Position numbers and translations under genes: made by a program. Below the pieces are notes generated by a model, which searched no databases, was not told the origin of the DNA, and saw nothing but the letters and a program-made list of their open reading frames with translations. Positions 16,206-19,725 of a stretch of 64,000 nucleotides of DNA are shown in pieces. Position 1 is the first letter of the stretch. Every line of letters starts with the position of its first letter. The DNA lies in IMG/VR virus record IMGVR_UViG_3300025364_000003, positions 124,001 to 188,000 of that record; one strand, written 5' to 3'.

Positions 16206-17276
16206 ATGCCAGCAAAATCACAAGATCAGCAGCAGGCCGCCGGAATTGCATTGCAGGCCAAAAGAGAAGGCACTGTGGACGAGCTACCCAGCGGTTCAGC
16301 TTCCAAAGAAATGGCCAAATCGATGACTAAAAAGGAATTGGAAAAACTGGCTGGAACAAAACATAAAGGGTTGCCAAAAGACATAGACGAGTCCAAAACA
16401 TGGGCCGGCTCGTCGTTAGTAGCTGTTTTCAAGGAGGAAATGCAAGGCGTTTCTGACCAAGACGATGAAGAAGAACAAATCACAACACAAAAATCCAAGG
16501 TAGAACGTTTGAATGATCGAGAAATTGGCACCGGCAAAGGCACAGAAGATACTTGGACTTCTACTGCTGGAGGAACTGCACCAGCCATTGCCAATAACGC
16601 TCGTAGTCCGATGACTTCAAATACTGCCGGTGCACGTGTTGCCGAGCAAGTAAAACTTTCAACCGGCAAGGAAACATGTCCAGCATGTGACGGCACTGGC
16701 CTGAAGGATGGCAGAGATAACAGACCAGCTCCTATGTGGCAACCGGATCTCTGTCCTGTTTGCCTTGGAAAAGGCGAGGTAGAAACAGGAAAAGAACTTG
16801 AAGAAATTCATGCTTCAAACAAAATAAATGAAACAATTAATCTCAGCAGGTGGCAACAGCTTGCAGGACTTAAAGTTGTTTCTGAACTTTTAACAGAAAA
16901 AAAAGAAAAGCGGGTGCAAAAAGCCGTGGACTCAAAAGCAGGTCAGGCAAAGCCTAATAAAGCTGCTAAATCCGTAGCAAAAGAAAGCACTTCATTTGAA
17001 GAAGTGTTAAAATCTCTTTTTAAAGAAGGAACGACTACAGAACAGAGATATTTTGATACCAATCAGGACGAAATTGGTGAAGGCAGAAACCCAAATAGCC
17101 TTGACATCGTTTTTGAAATGGACACAGCTCAGGCAAAAAATTATGTTAGTCGATTAGCAAAACATGGCTGGTCCTGGGACAAGGTTGCAGAACAACTAAA
17201 AAACCAATATGGAGTCAGGCCATATGAGATCGACAAAGTGTTGTTTCCTCATTGGAAAGAAGTAACTGGTCAATGA
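16206..17276 (+). CDS. modular protein: DUF3008-like N-terminus + DnaJ-type zinc finger + RWxxLAGL motif
   Basis: PAKSQDQQQAAGIAL.AKR...ASKEM..SM..KELE.LA.TK.KGLP; CPACDGTG...CPVCLGKG; several I/L-x-E sites. Confidence 0.7.
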   Translation: MPAKSQDQQQAAGIALQAKREGTVDELPSGSASKEMAKSMTKKELEKLAGTKHKGLPKDIDESKTWAGSSLVAVFKEEMQGVSDQDDEEEQITTQKSKVERLNDREIGTGKGTEDTWTSTAGGTAPAIANNARSPMTSNTAGARVAEQVKLSTGKETCPACDGTGLKDGRDNRPAPMWQPDLCPVCLGKGEVETGKELEEIHASNKINETINLSRWQQLAGLKVVSELLTEKKEKRVQKAVDSKAGQAKPNKAAKSVAKESTSFEEVLKSLFKEGTTTEQRYFDTNQDEIGEGRNPNSLDIVFEMDTAQAKNYVSRLAKHGWSWDKVAEQLKNQYGVRPYEIDKVLFPHWKEVTGQ

Positions 17277-17491
17277 CAAAAATTAGCAAACGTCGTTTGA
17301 TGGAATTAGCGGGGTTGGACATTGCCCCTTCGCCAACGAGTGTCAATGCATTTCATGCTCCGGGTCACATGGCAAAAGTAAACCAAGCACAAGAAATAAG
17401 AGATGTGCTTGGCCAAGATGAAGAAGATACTGTGCCCTCTGATGATATTGAAGAAGTAGAAAGTGAACTACTTGCTGTCGATTTTGACTAA
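17273..17491 (+). CDS. small acidic protein with ISKRRLMELAGL leader
   Basis: Likely start ATG 17273 (ATGA overlap). Confidence 0.6.
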   Translation: MTKISKRRLMELAGLDIAPSPTSVNAFHAPGHMAKVNQAQEIRDVLGQDEEDTVPSDDIEEVESELLAVDFD

Positions 17492-17950
17492 TCCATCAAA
17501 ACGCTCAAAAGGTTCAATCTTTTGAAGACTGTCTGACAATATTGTCATCACTTTTCCAAAAATTAGGTCACCCTCACGTTCTTTTGCTAAAATAACTGTT
17601 CTACCCCATAGTTGGTTCTCAACGATGAATTGAACTTCTTGCCAGGTTGGTAGATCACATTCATGTCTTTCGAGAATGGTGACAAGTTTTTGTGGCATTG
17701 TCAGTTTGATGTCATCTATGGTTGAAATACTGCGGATTGAGTCTTTATTTAGAATTTTACTAAGGCCAACTTCATTAACTCGATGCACCGCTCCGCAGTT
17801 AGGGCACTGTGCATATGAAGGCTTTACTTTTGCAGTTACTTCTTCGAGTACGCTGAACACTACAAATTTGTGAAATGGCGGCTCTGCCATTCGTTTAAAT
17901 TGCGGCAAGATACACTTGCATTCAACGAGATGTTTTACATACTCTGGCAT
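17468..17950 (-). CDS. hypothetical zinc-ribbon protein
   Basis: ECKC...QCPNCGAVH. Confidence 0.7.
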   Translation of the reverse strand: MPEYVKHLVECKCILPQFKRMAEPPFHKFVVFSVLEEVTAKVKPSYAQCPNCGAVHRVNEVGLSKILNKDSIRSISTIDDIKLTMPQKLVTILERHECDLPTWQEVQFIVENQLWGRTVILAKEREGDLIFGKVMTILSDSLQKIEPFERFDGLVKIDSK

Positions 17951-17958
17951 TTGGTTAA

Positions 17959-18120
17959 CTATAGGAATAAAAATAGCTTAACTATTATCGCAAAAAAAGC
18001 GCAGGTAGCCACTAAGCCAATGGCAACCCACGACTTTTTCTTCTTCAGGAGAGAGAGAGACTTTTGTCGTTTTTCGACTTTTTTAGCCTGCTCTACTCTC
18101 CTGAAGACGGCAAAGGGTTT
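17959..18120 (-). CDS. -1 frame extension of 18093-18368 encoding a C-terminal transmembrane anchor (putative programmed frameshift product)
   Basis: 53 sense codons with no upstream start codon; opens at slippery A_AAC_CCT; ends KKKKSWVAIGLVATCAFFAIIVKLFLFL*. Confidence 0.6.
   Translation of the reverse strand, partial: KPFAVFRRVEQAKKVEKRQKSLSLLKKKKSWVAIGLVATCAFFAIIVKLFLFL
18042..18120 (-). promoter_or_regulatory. putative -1 ribosomal frameshift signal (slippery heptamer + stem-loop)
   Basis: AAACCCT (18120-18114), 6-nt spacer, perfect 12-bp inverted repeat 18096-18107 / 18042-18053 with internal GTCG-AAAAA-CGAC hairpin. Confidence 0.6.
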
Positions 18121-18368
18121 TCTTCATCCGTGTATTTTGAAAGAGAAGTATCCAAACCTTTCATGAATCTATCAACATTACGTTGAAAGCCATCCATAAT
18201 TGCCTGATCAACGATGTCGAGAACACGAGCCATTGACTCTGGGTCAATATTTTGGCCAGTGCGACGCACGGTTAGTACCGTATGATCTCGGGTATGTTCC
18301 CTGATTGTACGGACGAGGTGAAATACTTCTTTTTCGATTGCTGTTTCGAGCTTTTTTCTGTCAGTCAT
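18093..18368 (-). CDS. hypothetical protein (0-frame product of the frameshift gene)
   Basis: ORF track; ends EENPLPSSGE*. Confidence 0.75.
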   Translation of the reverse strand: MTDRKKLETAIEKEVFHLVRTIREHTRDHTVLTVRRTGQNIDPESMARVLDIVDQAIMDGFQRNVDRFMKGLDTSLSKYTDEENPLPSSGE

Positions 18369-18370
18369 GC

Positions 18371-18934
18371 TTATCGCCTCTTTTGCTTACGTTCCTGACG
18401 CCTACGCTTTCGTGACTTCTTTTTTGTGTGCTTGTCAGCGATTGCGTGAGCAACATAAGACTCTGGCTTCAGCATGCACTCAAAACCCATTGATTGTACA
18501 TATCCCTTAAGCTGATCTGAGAATTTTGCAGTAAATTCTTCACGCTTGTGAGAGGGGCTTGCGTCAATGTGCACCTCCGGCGAAACAGAAATTGCTTCCT
18601 GCATTGCCAAGCCAATCATGCATGATCGAGTAACCTCGTCAAACATTCTCATCTTTTGCACACCAACAGGAAACTTTGCACGAGGCACAAATTCCTTAGT
18701 ATAAAAGTACAAACCACCCTTACCGACTCTGTGAACAGAGATTACGGAAATGAATTGGAATGCATGGCCAATCATCTGAGAGTCGGTACCAACGGCAACA
18801 ACATAATCGTATCCCTTGTGATTTGGATCACGCATGAAGGAGCCAATGTGCTTAAACACTTCTTCAGTGCTTCGCTTTTCCTTGGAACCAGGCTCGTTCC
18901 ATTGGACTGTCATTACTTGCTCTTGGTCATACAT
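18371..18934 (-). CDS. RNase H-like YkuK (DUF458) family protein
   Basis: VGTDSQ, HRVGKGG, R...E..RS, EVHID, G.....GF...KP.S..A...AD.H. Confidence 0.88.
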   Translation of the reverse strand: MYDQEQVMTVQWNEPGSKEKRSTEEVFKHIGSFMRDPNHKGYDYVVAVGTDSQMIGHAFQFISVISVHRVGKGGLYFYTKEFVPRAKFPVGVQKMRMFDEVTRSCMIGLAMQEAISVSPEVHIDASPSHKREEFTAKFSDQLKGYVQSMGFECMLKPESYVAHAIADKHTKKKSRKRRRQERKQKRR

Positions 18935-18945
18935 TTTAGAGTTAC

Positions 18946-19725
18946 CTATTCCTTTTCTAGGTCAGTGCGCAATGCGCCACAACGATTACAATTTTTTGAG
19001 CTTTTGCGGTTACGTGCTCCGCACTCTGCACAATCCCACCTTTGATCATCCAACTGCTTATATGTGTTGGGAGACTCCTTGGTTCTCACCAAAAAATTCT
19101 TTTTTACGTACTGACAATAATAACCCCTGCACATGTCAGGTCGCTTCTCATAAATTCCGCACATTCCATTGTCCGGATTTAAAAATTTACAACCAAATCT
19201 AGGACCCATCGCCTGAATCCTCATCATTGGATACGAGGTAGGTTTTTGAAAAATGGGGTGACCATTGAAAAATTTTTCCCCAATAAGCTTACCTTCCTCG
19301 TAATCTATAACTACGTCGCTACGCTTGTAGTTCCACCCCTTCTTCTTAGCATATCTCAGAAAAGATTTAACCCATTTCTCCTTAACGGGACCAAGAACAT
19401 GTTCTAAGTCGTCCGGATCAAGCCTGCAACATGCTGAAAATACTCCGGGAACTCCACAACAATTGGAAAGACAGGTTTCTGTTGCTACCTCATCTGTAAA
19501 TAACTTTCGTTCACTTTTTGGTTTTGATTGCCACATATCGGCATGATTTAGCGACAACACAGGAAGGTAGTATTTATTTTCTTTTCTTGCTTGTGATAAT
19601 TCTTCTTTTGTGTGTTTAATAGGCTTATCTTCATCTAATTCAGAAAATGGGTTAAGATCGATACGATCTTTGTCCATCGAAATAAGCTCATCCAAGCTCA
19701 AAGTTTTTCTATTTTGTTCTGACAC
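18946..19725 (-). CDS. YkgJ-family Cys-cluster (Fe-S/Zn) protein with C-terminal RanBP2-type zinc finger
   Basis: C...CC...ACC; C.FL....CGIYEKRP.MCR.Y.C; WDCAECGARNRKSSKNCNRC matches W-x-C-x2-C-x3-N-x6-C-x2-C. Confidence 0.8.
   Translation of the reverse strand: MSEQNRKTLSLDELISMDKDRIDLNPFSELDEDKPIKHTKEELSQARKENKYYLPVLSLNHADMWQSKPKSERKLFTDEVATETCLSNCCGVPGVFSACCRLDPDDLEHVLGPVKEKWVKSFLRYAKKKGWNYKRSDVVIDYEEGKLIGEKFFNGHPIFQKPTSYPMMRIQAMGPRFGCKFLNPDNGMCGIYEKRPDMCRGYYCQYVKKNFLVRTKESPNTYKQLDDQRWDCAECGARNRKSSKNCNRCGALRTDLEKE

What the first reader, a model, noticed from the sequence alone, without database searches (positions are those of the whole stretch)
17959..18368. Putative programmed -1 frameshift that adds a membrane tail-anchor to a 91-aa protein
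Seen (minus strand): the ORF ends GAA AAC CCT TTG CCG TCT TCA GGA GAG TAG. A_AAC_CCT and the overlapping C_CCT_TTG both fit X_XXY_YYZ. Six nt after the first heptamer begins TCTTCAGGAGAG, which pairs perfectly with CTCTCCTGAAGA 42 nt downstream and encloses a GTCG-AAAAA-CGAC hairpin. The -1 frame is closed by TGA one codon before the slip site and has no start codon before the hydrophobic segment. It runs 53 codons (..PFAVFRRVEQAKKVEKRQKSLSLLKKKKSWVAIGLVATCAFFAIIVKLFLFL*), filling the apparent intergenic gap up to 8 nt before the next ATG. The end is a basic patch followed by one transmembrane helix. Known: phage -1 frameshifting is best documented in tail-assembly chaperones and capsid/tail proteins. 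Inference: soluble and membrane-anchored isoforms made at a fixed ratio, in a non-structural operon.
Basis: partly seen in the sequence, partly recalled or inferred. Interest (0 to 1): 0.8.

Follow-up and report, generated by a model that had tools for sequence, protein, structure and literature searches.

The report
Phage frameshift site adding membrane anchor
A small gene of an uncultivated 461-kb phage carries a conserved ribosome-slipping signal that most likely lets a minority of ribosomes change reading frame and extend the protein with a membrane-spanning tail, a use of frameshifting I did not find described for phages.

Summary
The 91-aa minus-strand ORF (18368-18093) is overlapped by a start-less -1 frame. 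That frame is open from 18123 and encodes a basic linker plus one transmembrane helix, stopping 8 nt before the next gene.

- **Conservation:** 34 distinct homologous loci (33-100% identity, huge-phage contigs) share the architecture. CCCTTT is invariant at the nucleotide level and in phase. At the site Pro is always CCT and Leu is TTG in 31 of 32, against 27% and 13% elsewhere in these genes.
- **Coding signal:** the -1 frame shows purifying selection (pN/pS 0.46 against 1.2-1.3 in the other frames), starting upstream of the 0-frame stop. Arg-Arg there is kept through five different codons.
- **Rivals excluded:** an assembly indel, an independently initiated small ORF and a non-coding spacer.

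Corrections: the universal slip site is C_CCU_UUG, not A_AAC_CCU. The stem is very stable here (z = -5.4) but is only partly conserved across the family.

In E. coli both heptamers shift below 1%, so the anchored isoform is probably minor. The function of the protein is unknown. No experiment has been done; this is a new, well-supported member of canonical -1 frameshifting with an unusual output.

The parts
18093..18368 (-). 0-frame ORF, 91 aa including the TAG stop. It is predicted to be a two-helix hairpin (residues 3-37 and 43-79) with a disordered C-terminus where the slip site lies.
   Evidence: AlphaFold2 mean pLDDT 83.6; 24 homologous protein clusters
18124..18126 (-). TGA that closes the -1 frame two codons upstream of the heptamer. 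It limits where a shift, or any -1 initiation, could occur.
   Evidence: the same TGA is present in about half of the homologous loci
18111..18117 (-). C_CCT_TTG, the slippery heptamer conserved in the whole tail-bearing family and the most likely shift site.
   Evidence: CCCTTT is invariant in 34 of 34 distinct loci; the last base is G in 31, T in 2, A in 1. Synonymous sites are frozen. It is the only in-phase copy in the window. It is listed as shift-prone in E. coli.
18114..18120 (-). A_AAC_CCT, an overlapping second heptamer. With the first it forms an extended run A_AAC_CCU_UUG in which three successive tRNAs could re-pair.
   Evidence: It is absent in L021, L026, L029, L047 and L109. In-phase copies occur 5 times in the window's ORFs. 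It gives 0.06-0.72% in E. coli.
18042..18107 (-). Downstream stem-loop. The 12-bp outer helix pairs 18107-18096 with 18053-18042. Inner helices are 18094-18091/18057-18054 and 18089-18085/18062-18058, with an apical hairpin 18078-18075/18069-18066. The 0-frame stop (18095-18093) lies at the one-base bulge junction between the outer and the inner helix.
   Evidence: -34.1 kcal/mol, z = -5.4. The outer helix is kept in 7 close relatives, with one compensatory G-C/A-U pair.
17959..18117 (-). -1 frame extension: 52 sense codons from CCC plus TAG, with no usable start codon.
   Evidence: pN/pS 0.46-0.57 in this frame against 0.7-1.3 in the others
18031..18102 (-). Basic linker of the trans-frame product (codons 6-29 of the tail; 11 Lys/Arg against 2 Asp/Glu before the helix).
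   Evidence: the Arg-Arg at codons 6-7 is conserved through five synonymous codons
17962..18030 (-). Single C-terminal transmembrane helix (tail residues 30-52), which gives a tail-anchor topology.
   Evidence: mean Kyte-Doolittle 2.5 over 19 residues; an equivalent helix is present in every tail-bearing homologue
17468..17950 (-). Downstream syntenic gene (160 aa, four conserved Cys). It starts 8 nt after the -1 stop. In five relatives the -1 stop overlaps its ATG as ATGA.
   Evidence: AlphaFold2 pLDDT 85.9, no Protein Data Bank (PDB) fold match
18371..18934 (-). Upstream gene of the same minus-strand cluster (187 aa, RNaseH_like PF04308). Context only.
   Evidence: E = 3.4e-27; the same neighbour occurs in relatives

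Best explanation
This is a programmed -1 ribosomal frameshift site.

**Proposed mechanism.** Most ribosomes translating the 91-aa ORF read on for five more codons and terminate at TAG. This releases a soluble two-helix protein. A minority slip back one base while tRNA-Pro and tRNA-Leu occupy CCU and UUG of C_CCU_UUG, and re-pair on CCC and UUU. The overlapping A_AAC_CCU possibly contributes. The shifted ribosomes then read 50 further codons in the -1 frame and make a 136-aa protein. That protein has the same N-terminal domain followed by a basic linker and one C-terminal transmembrane helix. It is therefore a tail-anchored isoform with the helical domain on the cytoplasmic face of the host membrane.

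**Stimulator.** In this genome a very stable stem-loop starts 3 nt after the heptamer and encloses the 0-frame stop. It most likely acts as the stimulator by resisting unwinding while the heptamer is being decoded.

**What is shown and what is inferred.**
- Shown by sequence and comparison: the signals, their conservation, and that the -1 frame evolves as coding sequence from the heptamer onward.
- Inferred: that shifting really occurs, its efficiency (probably of the order of 1%), membrane insertion, and the purpose.

**Suggested purpose.** A few anchored subunits may tether an assembly of the soluble form to the membrane in a genetically fixed proportion. This is a hypothesis only.
For: 1. 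**Shared architecture.** It is found in 34 distinct homologous loci at 33-100% protein identity. Each has in-phase CCCTTT (34/34) and a -1 frame open from the heptamer to a transmembrane helix. That frame ends -4 to +21 nt from the next gene's start, with an ATGA overlap in five loci.
2. **Frozen synonymous sites in the 0 frame.** Pro is CCT in 34/34, against 27% of Pro codons elsewhere in these genes. Leu is TTG in 31/32, against 13% elsewhere. The preceding codon always ends in C.
3. **Coding signature in the -1 frame.** pN/pS is 0.46 for the linker, against 1.33 and 1.20 in the other frames. There are no stops in -1, against 2-5 in the 0 frame.
4. **The signature starts before the 0-frame stop.** Tail codon 5 is aromatic in 33/34. 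Codons 6-7 are Arg through AGG, AGA, CGA, CGG and CGT, while the 0-frame residues there vary among E, G, D and V.
5. **No room for independent initiation.** Most loci have no ATG/GTG/TTG before the helix, and four have none that could give a helix. In about half, only two codons (AGA AAA) separate the -1 stop from the heptamer.
6. **The stop is genuine.** Protein homologues stop at 91-108 aa and none is fused. Four assemblies are identical with no indel.
7. **The heptamer is known to be shift-prone.** C_CC.U_UU.G is among 18 under-represented, shift-prone heptamers in E. coli (PMC4066793). C_CCU_UUU is the West Nile virus site (PMC11507841).
8. **Stem.** z = -5.4 here. The mean z over 20 homologues is about -2. 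One compensatory pair is seen, and L018 keeps the CUACUC arm in a different codon phase.
9. **Negative control.** A tail-less distant relative, L007, lacks the heptamer.
Against: - No experimental, transcript or peptide evidence exists.
- In E. coli, C_CCU_UUG gives only 0.15% without a stimulator, 0.30% with the IS911 stimulators and 0.70% with the IS3 pseudoknot. A_AAC_CCU gives 0.06%, 0.08% and 0.72% (Table S3 of PMC4066793). The shift may therefore be rare unless the unknown host differs.
- The stem is not conserved family-wide. About 7 of 20 homologues have z at or below -2.6 and several are near 0.
- The stem's register differs between subclades, and its distance from the heptamer ranges from 2-3 nt to 12 nt.
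- Covariation rests on a single pair in 7 sequences.
- The hosts and their tRNA sets are unknown.
Confidence: 0.85

Rival explanations
1. Frameshifting occurs, but on A_AAC_CCU rather than on C_CCU_UUG.
For: The 6-nt spacer to the stem is the textbook distance. AAAA precedes CCC in most loci. Its efficiency with the IS3 pseudoknot in E. coli (0.72%) equals that of C_CCU_UUG.
Against: It is absent in L021, L026, L029, L047 and L109, which keep the tail and C_CCU_UUN. In-phase copies occur in four other ORFs of the window with no -1 extension. Its efficiency without a stimulator is lower (0.057% against 0.147%).
Confidence: 0.12
2. The hydrophobic peptide is a separate small gene. It would be translated by initiation at a non-canonical codon, or by re-initiation after termination at the 0-frame TAG, and not as an extension of the 91-aa protein.
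For: An AGGAG-like sequence lies in the 5' arm (18101-18097). Small membrane peptides are common in phage genomes. Gene callers leave the 143-150 nt uncalled.
Against: There is no ATG/GTG/TTG before the helix in most loci. Protein-level conservation in the -1 frame (Pro-Phe-Ala/Gly-x-aromatic-Arg-Arg) begins at the heptamer, upstream of the 0-frame stop. Only AGA AAA lies between the -1 stop and the heptamer in about half of the loci. This model also does not explain the frozen CCT TTG codons.
Confidence: 0.05
3. The spacer is non-coding. The stem-loop would be a regulatory RNA element (processing site, attenuator or translational-coupling device) and the open -1 frame would be incidental.
For: The hairpin is very stable. 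Some relatives lack a clear stem, so structure and frame could be unrelated features.
Against: pN/pS is 0.46-0.57 in the -1 frame only, and that frame has no stops while the others have 2-5. A transmembrane helix is found in all 34 loci despite high sequence divergence. There is no T-run after the stem on the minus strand and no Rfam match.
Confidence: 0.03
4. It is an assembly or sequencing indel, or a decaying gene: really one continuous ORF broken by a 1-nt error.
For: None was found. It was the default artefact to exclude.
Against: The same two-frame arrangement is seen in 34 distinct sequences from many samples and assemblers. No fused homologue exists among 24 protein clusters. Contigs from four runs are identical across 17700-18700. 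These were contigs, not raw reads, and some may be the source sample.
Confidence: 0.01
5. The frame change happens at the RNA level, by transcriptional slippage of RNA polymerase, and not on the ribosome.
For: Recoding by polymerase slippage is known in bacteria and phages. In distant relatives the equivalent site is an A8 run.
Against: Here the longest homopolymers are A4, C3 and T3, which is far below the runs that support slippage. The conserved pattern is the phased X_XXY_YYZ, which matters only to tRNA re-pairing.
Confidence: 0.02

Closest known systems
E. coli dnaX tau/gamma -1 frameshift (A_AAA_AAG with a downstream stem-loop and an upstream Shine-Dalgarno-like element)
   Same: Bacterial-type tandem -1 slippage on an X_XXY_YYZ heptamer, with a stable stem-loop a few nucleotides downstream. 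Two products are made from one gene in a set ratio.
   Different: dnaX shifting gives a shorter product, at about 50%. Here the shift gives a longer product on a weak heptamer (C_CCU_UUG). No convincing upstream Shine-Dalgarno-like stimulator was seen. (The dnaX details are from general knowledge and PMC5009743.)
Phage lambda G/GT and other tail-assembly-chaperone frameshifts
   Same: A phage -1 frameshift near the 3' end of a small ORF gives a minor C-terminally extended isoform that shares the N-terminal domain. The conservation is of architecture rather than of sequence.
   Different: The genomic position is not between the major tail and tape-measure genes. The neighbours are an RNaseH-like protein and a four-cysteine (Cys4) protein. 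The extension is a transmembrane anchor, not a tape-measure-binding domain, and the heptamer differs.
Flavivirus NS1' frameshift (C_CCU_UUU plus a pseudoknot; West Nile virus, PMC11507841)
   Same: The heptamer is nearly the same (C_CCU_UUN). Two relatives here (L029, L039) have exactly C_CCU_UUU. In both systems the base of the downstream structure sits so close that it must open before shifting.
   Different: It works on a eukaryotic ribosome with very high efficiency. The stimulator is a pseudoknot rather than a hairpin, and the gene and outcome are unrelated.
Recoding that switches membrane association in animal viruses: arterivirus nsp2TF (-2 frameshift, alternative transmembrane region) and Ebola GP/sGP (transcriptional slippage), both as cited in PMC5009743; alphavirus 6K/TF, recalled from general knowledge and not looked up
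   Same: A frame change near a defined site gives isoforms that differ in having a membrane-spanning segment.
   Different: These are eukaryotic viruses with other mechanisms or stimulators. I found no phage or bacterial example in the papers searched.

Membership tests
Canonical programmed -1 ribosomal frameshifting | Slippery heptamer X_XXY_YYZ in the 0-frame phase, inside the overlap of the two frames | tested here: met
   C_CCT_TTG at 18117-18111 is in phase and lies 2 codons after the -1 stop and 6 codons before the 0 stop.
Canonical programmed -1 ribosomal frameshifting | Heptamer conserved at the nucleotide level across homologues, including synonymous positions | tested here: met
   CCCTTT is invariant in 34/34 distinct loci. 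CCT is used for Pro in 34/34 (27% elsewhere) and TTG for Leu in 31/32 (13% elsewhere).
Canonical programmed -1 ribosomal frameshifting | The -1 ORF lacks its own initiation signal yet evolves as coding sequence | tested here: met
   No start codon precedes the helix. pN/pS is 0.46 against 1.2-1.3 in the other frames. Arg-Arg is kept through five codons upstream of the 0 stop.
Canonical programmed -1 ribosomal frameshifting | Stimulatory RNA structure 5-9 nt downstream, conserved with covariation | tested here: inconclusive
   The stem is strong here (z = -5.4) but lies 3 nt from C_CCU_UUG. It is kept in 7 close relatives with one compensatory pair. Another subclade uses a different register 12 nt away, and the stem is weak or absent in others.
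Canonical programmed -1 ribosomal frameshifting | Trans-frame protein detected and shifting abolished by slip-site mutation | not testable with these tools
   There is no cultured phage or host and no RNA or proteome data. Only contigs of DNA runs were available.
Phage tail-assembly-chaperone frameshift (G/GT type) | Gene pair located between the major tail protein and tape-measure genes; the extension binds the tape measure | tested here: not met
   The flanking genes are RNaseH_like, a RanBP-type zinc-ribbon protein, a four-cysteine (Cys4) protein and a DUF3008 protein. The extension is a transmembrane helix.
Tail-anchored membrane protein (the trans-frame product) | Single hydrophobic helix within the last ~30 residues, preceded by a positively charged segment, with no other membrane segment | tested here: met
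   Tail residues 30-52 have a mean hydropathy of 2.5. Before them are 11 Lys/Arg against 2 Asp/Glu. The N-terminal domain is a soluble-looking helical hairpin. Actual membrane insertion was not tested.

The most novel reading that the evidence does not exclude
The recoding may be a trait of the whole gene family rather than of one clade. This small helical protein is always encoded just upstream of the four-cysteine (Cys4) protein gene in large uncultivated phages. Different lineages would use different slip sites to add different membrane-targeting modules.

- In one lineage, C_CCU_UUG adds a transmembrane helix.
- In another, A_AAA_AAG/C sits at or next to the stop and adds a 13-25-residue, Trp-rich amphipathic helix. 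This is seen in L049-L053, L063, L065, L066, L069, L081, L084, L089 and L131.
- Other lineages have no tail.

That would be repeated, convergent use of -1 frameshifting to set the membrane-bound fraction of one protein.
Probability: 0.35. Interest if true: 0.8.

Novelty: new member of a known kind. Interest (0 to 1): 0.62.

Why it matters
Phage frameshifting is known almost only from structural genes, namely tail chaperones and capsid or tail proteins.

- **A new type of output.** A conserved site in a non-structural gene of huge phages, whose output is a membrane anchor, would widen what recoding is used for in phages. It would give a genetically fixed soluble-to-anchored ratio.
- **Annotation.** Gene callers miss it systematically. 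All the assemblies examined leave a gap of about 145 nt, and one assembly mis-extends the downstream gene into it.
- **A test case for weak heptamers.** It offers a natural, deeply conserved example of a weak heptamer (C_CCU_UUG). This could be used to study how weak heptamers are selected or boosted in non-model hosts.
- **A handle on function.** It also gives a starting point for studying two widespread huge-phage proteins of unknown function.

Tried and rejected
- **Cultured relatives.** A nucleotide search of the 1.6-kb region and a protein search with the downstream protein, both against 50,697 GenBank phage records, gave no match. No annotated or cultured relative is available.
- **Function from profile libraries.** PHROGs and Pfam gave nothing for the 91-aa or the 160-aa protein.
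- **Function from structure.** Good AlphaFold2 models of both proteins had no significant PDB fold match. The ESM Atlas gave only sub-threshold leads.
- **RNA families and terminators.** Rfam found no family. The terminator scan found no minus-strand terminator at the stem. The plus-strand terminator-like hit at 18034-18057 is the reverse complement of the 3' arm.
- **One consensus structure for all homologues.** This was rejected. The two subclades pair the GAGUAG region with differently placed 3' arms, and distant clades have unrelated or no hairpins.
- **Stop-codon reassignment (TAG read as sense).** Rejected. Homologues end in TAG, TAA or TGA, and reading through TAG here meets TGA after 15 codons without reaching the helix.
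- **The -1 tails of the 'LKKRK' group of distant relatives as extra frameshift cases.** Rejected. Their similarity is a by-product of overlapping the conserved N-terminus of the downstream gene, and L100 and L117 carry the same peptide in the +1 frame.
- **Openness of the -1 frame as evidence in the A_AAA_AAG group.** Weak, because the +1 frame is also open in 10 of 14.
- **A wider scan for that group.** The first attempt failed for lack of conserved columns. The second added only two loci.
Full report
**1. The observation**

Reading 18600-17800 on the minus strand and listing ORFs confirms every detail.
- The 91-aa ORF runs 18368..18093 and ends GAA AAC CCT TTG CCG TCT TCA GGA GAG TAG.
- The -1 frame is closed by TGA at 18126-18124. 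It then stays open for AGA AAA and 52 further codons, to TAG at 17961-17959. That is 8 nt before the ATG of the next gene at 17950.
- Its product is Pro-Phe-Ala-Val-Phe-Arg-Arg-Val-Glu, then a Lys/Arg-rich linker, then a 23-residue hydrophobic helix.
- The only ATG/GTG/TTG in the frame is a GTG at codon 36, inside the helix.
- The two 12-nt arms are perfectly complementary. The 88-96-nt region folds at -34.1 to -36.8 kcal/mol with z = -5.4 to -6.4.
- Among 67 non-overlapping ORFs (19,544 codons) of the window this is the only in-phase CCCTTTG. It is also the only ORF with an in-phase heptamer and a -1 extension of 30 or more codons.

**2. Where the window comes from**

The window is identical to part of a 461-kb viral contig (IMGVR_UViG_3300005974_000004 / Ga0081526_100001). 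The sample is a hypersaline-lake metagenome. Nothing similar exists among 50,697 deposited phage genomes, by DNA or by protein. The lineage is therefore uncultivated.

The site lies in a four-gene minus-strand cluster, in this order:
- a 259-aa protein with a RanBP-type zinc ribbon;
- a 187-aa RNaseH_like protein (PF04308);
- the 91-aa gene;
- a 160-aa protein with four conserved cysteines.

**3. It is not an indel**

A search of 5.8 billion proteins found 24 clusters of homologues at 51-100% identity. Eighteen are 91 aa long, two are 92, two are 106 and two are 108. None has the roughly 136 aa expected of a fused ORF.

In their alignment Asn84 and Pro85 are invariant, and Glu83 and Leu86 nearly so, inside an otherwise variable C-terminus. 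Contigs assembled from four sequencing runs are identical over 17700-18700, with no inserted or deleted letters. These are contigs rather than raw reads, and some may be the source sample. The weight of the argument therefore rests on the many divergent homologues.

**4. The architecture is conserved**

I fetched DNA for homologues from three sources:
- viral and metagenome collections;
- exact protein look-ups;
- the more conserved downstream gene used as an anchor.

In 34 distinct sequences the following all hold:
- CCCTTT is invariant and in phase. The first C is always the third base of a 0-frame codon. The seventh base is G in 31, T in 2 and A in 1.
- The -1 frame is open from that point for 45-66 codons.
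- Its last 20 or so residues form a hydrophobic helix preceded by a basic stretch.
- Its stop lies between -4 and +21 nt of the start of the four-cysteine (Cys4) gene. In five loci it overlaps that start as ATGA, the usual arrangement for translational coupling.

The length of the 0-frame after the site varies from 5 to 24 codons, and its stop is TAG, TAA or TGA. Stop-codon reassignment is therefore not the explanation.

Only C_CCU_UUN is universal. A distant relative, L007 (21% identity in the small protein, 45% in the neighbour), has neither the heptamer nor room for a tail.

**5. The -1 frame is translated, starting at the heptamer**

- **Downstream of the 0-frame stop.** In 13 ungapped relatives, pN/pS is 0.46 in the -1 frame for the linker, which lies before any possible start codon. 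It is 1.33 and 1.20 in the other two frames. The -1 frame has no stops, against 2-5 in the 0 frame and 0-2 in the +1 frame.
- **Between the heptamer and the 0-frame stop.** The -1 reading is the better conserved of the two. Codon 5 is Phe, Tyr or Trp in 33 of 34. Codons 6 and 7 are Arg in 24 and 21 sequences, through AGG, AGA, CGA, CGG and CGT. The 0-frame residues at the same place wander among Glu, Gly, Asp, Val and others.
- **Upstream of the heptamer.** About half of the loci have only AGA AAA between the -1 stop and CCC. There is no room for independent initiation.
- **Synonymous sites in the 0 frame.** Pro is CCT in 34/34, against 27% of Pro codons elsewhere in these genes. Leu is TTG in 31/32, against 13% elsewhere. 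The sequences are related, so naive probabilities overstate this. The pattern still spans clades that share only a third of their residues.

Together these results exclude a separate small gene, a non-coding spacer and re-initiation after the stop.

**6. The slip site in the light of experiments**

Sharma et al. (PMC4066793) list C_CC.U_UU.G among 18 heptamers that are under-represented in E. coli genes and shift above 0.1% without a stimulator. Their Table S3 gives the following -1 frameshifting efficiencies:

| Heptamer | No stimulator | IS911 stimulators | IS3 pseudoknot |
|---|---|---|---|
| C_CCU_UUG | 0.147% | 0.303% | 0.699% |
| A_AAC_CCU | 0.057% | 0.080% | 0.718% |
| C_CCU_UUU | 0.212% | 2.995% | 11.7% |
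| C_CCU_UUC | 0.193% | 1.387% | 23.2% |

The family has therefore kept the least efficient member of the C_CCU_UUN set. This suggests either selection for a small anchored fraction or a host whose Leu-tRNA set behaves differently. The seventh base is also the first base of the -1 Ala/Gly codon, which constrains it.

The decamer A_AAC_CCU_UUG would let three successive tRNAs re-pair. That may explain why AAAA precedes CCC in most members.

C_CCU_UUU is the highly efficient West Nile virus site. There the base of the downstream structure is also thought to open before shifting (PMC11507841). This makes the 3-nt spacer seen here less troubling.

**7. The stem**

The stem is real and strong in the window. 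Across 20 homologues the 88 nt after the heptamer have a mean z of about -2. Seven are at or below -2.6, and several are near zero.

- **The six closest relatives plus the window.** The outer helix is in the same register and 86.6% of cells are paired, against 52-68% when the partner is slid. There is one compensatory pair: G-C in the window and L035, A-U in five others. In a tree of the N-terminal domain the window sits among the A-U sequences and L035 lies elsewhere. The double change is therefore not a single shared event with L035.
- **A second subclade (L036-L038, L014, L018, L019, L021).** Here the 5' CAG is CCG. The 3' arm uses CTA CTC instead of CTT CTG, so it pairs with GAGUAG 12 nt from the heptamer. 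L018 keeps CUACUC in a different codon phase, which changes the peptide but not the pairing.
- **More distant clades.** These show unrelated hairpins or none.

I conclude that a downstream helix embracing the 0-frame stop is selected in the 91-aa subfamily and very probably stimulates shifting here. It is not a defining feature of the family. There is no Rfam match and no minus-strand terminator.

**8. Products and likely role**

The 0-frame product is predicted with good confidence (pLDDT 83.6) to be a two-helix hairpin with a disordered tail where the site lies. The trans-frame product has 136 residues. It combines the same domain with a linker carrying 11 basic and 2 acidic residues and a C-terminal helix. 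This is the layout of a tail-anchored protein with its domain in the cytoplasm.

Neither this protein nor the syntenic Cys4 protein matches a known fold or family. I therefore commit only to the following. A small, fixed fraction of the protein is tethered to the host inner membrane. The soluble majority can associate with it, as with the shared-domain logic of lambda G/GT. This step is inference.

**9. Comparison and novelty**

Mechanistically this is canonical bacterial-type -1 frameshifting of the dnaX or IS-element kind. By output it resembles the phage tail-chaperone case, where a minor isoform is extended at the C-terminus. It fails the positional and functional criteria of that family, however.

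Recoding that adds or swaps a membrane segment is described for animal viruses, namely arterivirus nsp2TF and Ebola GP (PMC5009743). I found no phage or bacterial example in the papers searched. That search was limited. I rate the finding as a new member of a known kind, with an unusual output and an unusually weak, deeply conserved heptamer.

**10. A wider lead**

Among more distant relatives found through the downstream gene, about a dozen distinct loci share three features:
- the small ORF ends in, or just after, an in-phase A_AAA_AAG or A_AAA_AAC, often as A8-G-TGA;
- a gap of 40-58 nt follows;
- the -1 frame fills that gap exactly and encodes a Trp-rich amphipathic peptide.

The helical hydrophobic moment of these peptides is mostly 0.5-0.9, against 0.15-0.56 for the +1 frame. 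One close pair shows an AGG-to-CGT synonymous Arg change in the -1 frame.

Against this, Lys-rich C-termini create such heptamers by chance, and the +1 frame is open in 10 of 14 gaps. A third group, the 'LKKRK' tails, proved to be an artefact of overlap with the conserved start of the next gene. This remains a lead, stated as the novel case.

Noticed in passing
L049-L053, L063, L065, L066, L069, L081, L084, L089 (about 1420-1500 in each); L131 943-1008: Distant relatives of the 91-aa gene end in or beside an in-phase A_AAA_AAG/C, often as A8-G-TGA. A 40-58-nt gap follows, and its -1 frame encodes a Trp-rich amphipathic peptide that ends at the next gene's start. This may be a second lineage-specific frameshift that adds a membrane-binding helix instead of a transmembrane helix.
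   Followed up: partly
L073 and L077, heptamer at 1489, stop/start ATGA at 1501-1504: In these relatives there is no spacer. An in-phase A_AAA_AAG lies four codons before the stop, and the -1 frame there is the frame of the downstream Cys4 gene. A -1 shift would therefore fuse the two proteins. This could be chance, because the tail is Lys-rich.
   Followed up: no
L033 1299-1859: The gene caller extended the downstream gene to 186 aa by starting inside the hidden -1 tail region. All other assemblies leave 143-150 nt uncalled. These are examples of how the recoded tail is mis-annotated or missed.
   Followed up: partly
window 18091-18096 (minus strand): The 0-frame stop codon lies at the bulge junction of the stem (GAG-UAG-AG). 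In the 91-aa subfamily, GAGUAG is the conserved 5' arm. Ribosomes that do not shift must therefore melt the helix to terminate, and the structure could also influence termination or coupling to the next gene.
   Followed up: no
window 18946-19725 (minus strand): The first gene of the cluster (259 aa) ends in a RanBP2-type zinc ribbon (PF00641, E = 1.8e-6), a domain mostly known from eukaryotes. Upstream of the ribbon it has a Cys-rich segment.
   Followed up: no
window 16206-17276 (plus strand): A convergent neighbour of 356 aa combines an N-terminal DUF3008 with a weak DnaJ-type CXXCXGXG zinc-finger match. DUF3008 proteins flank the cluster in several relatives too.
   Followed up: no
L122 (PBIO01000025.1) and L123 (PBNF01000027.1): Contigs carrying the Cys4 gene are deposited as parts of Halobacteriovorax and Legionellales metagenome-assembled genomes. 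The first, a 101-kb contig, is the same as a viral-collection contig (L092). It is probably a phage contig binned with a bacterium, or a hint of the host.
   Followed up: no
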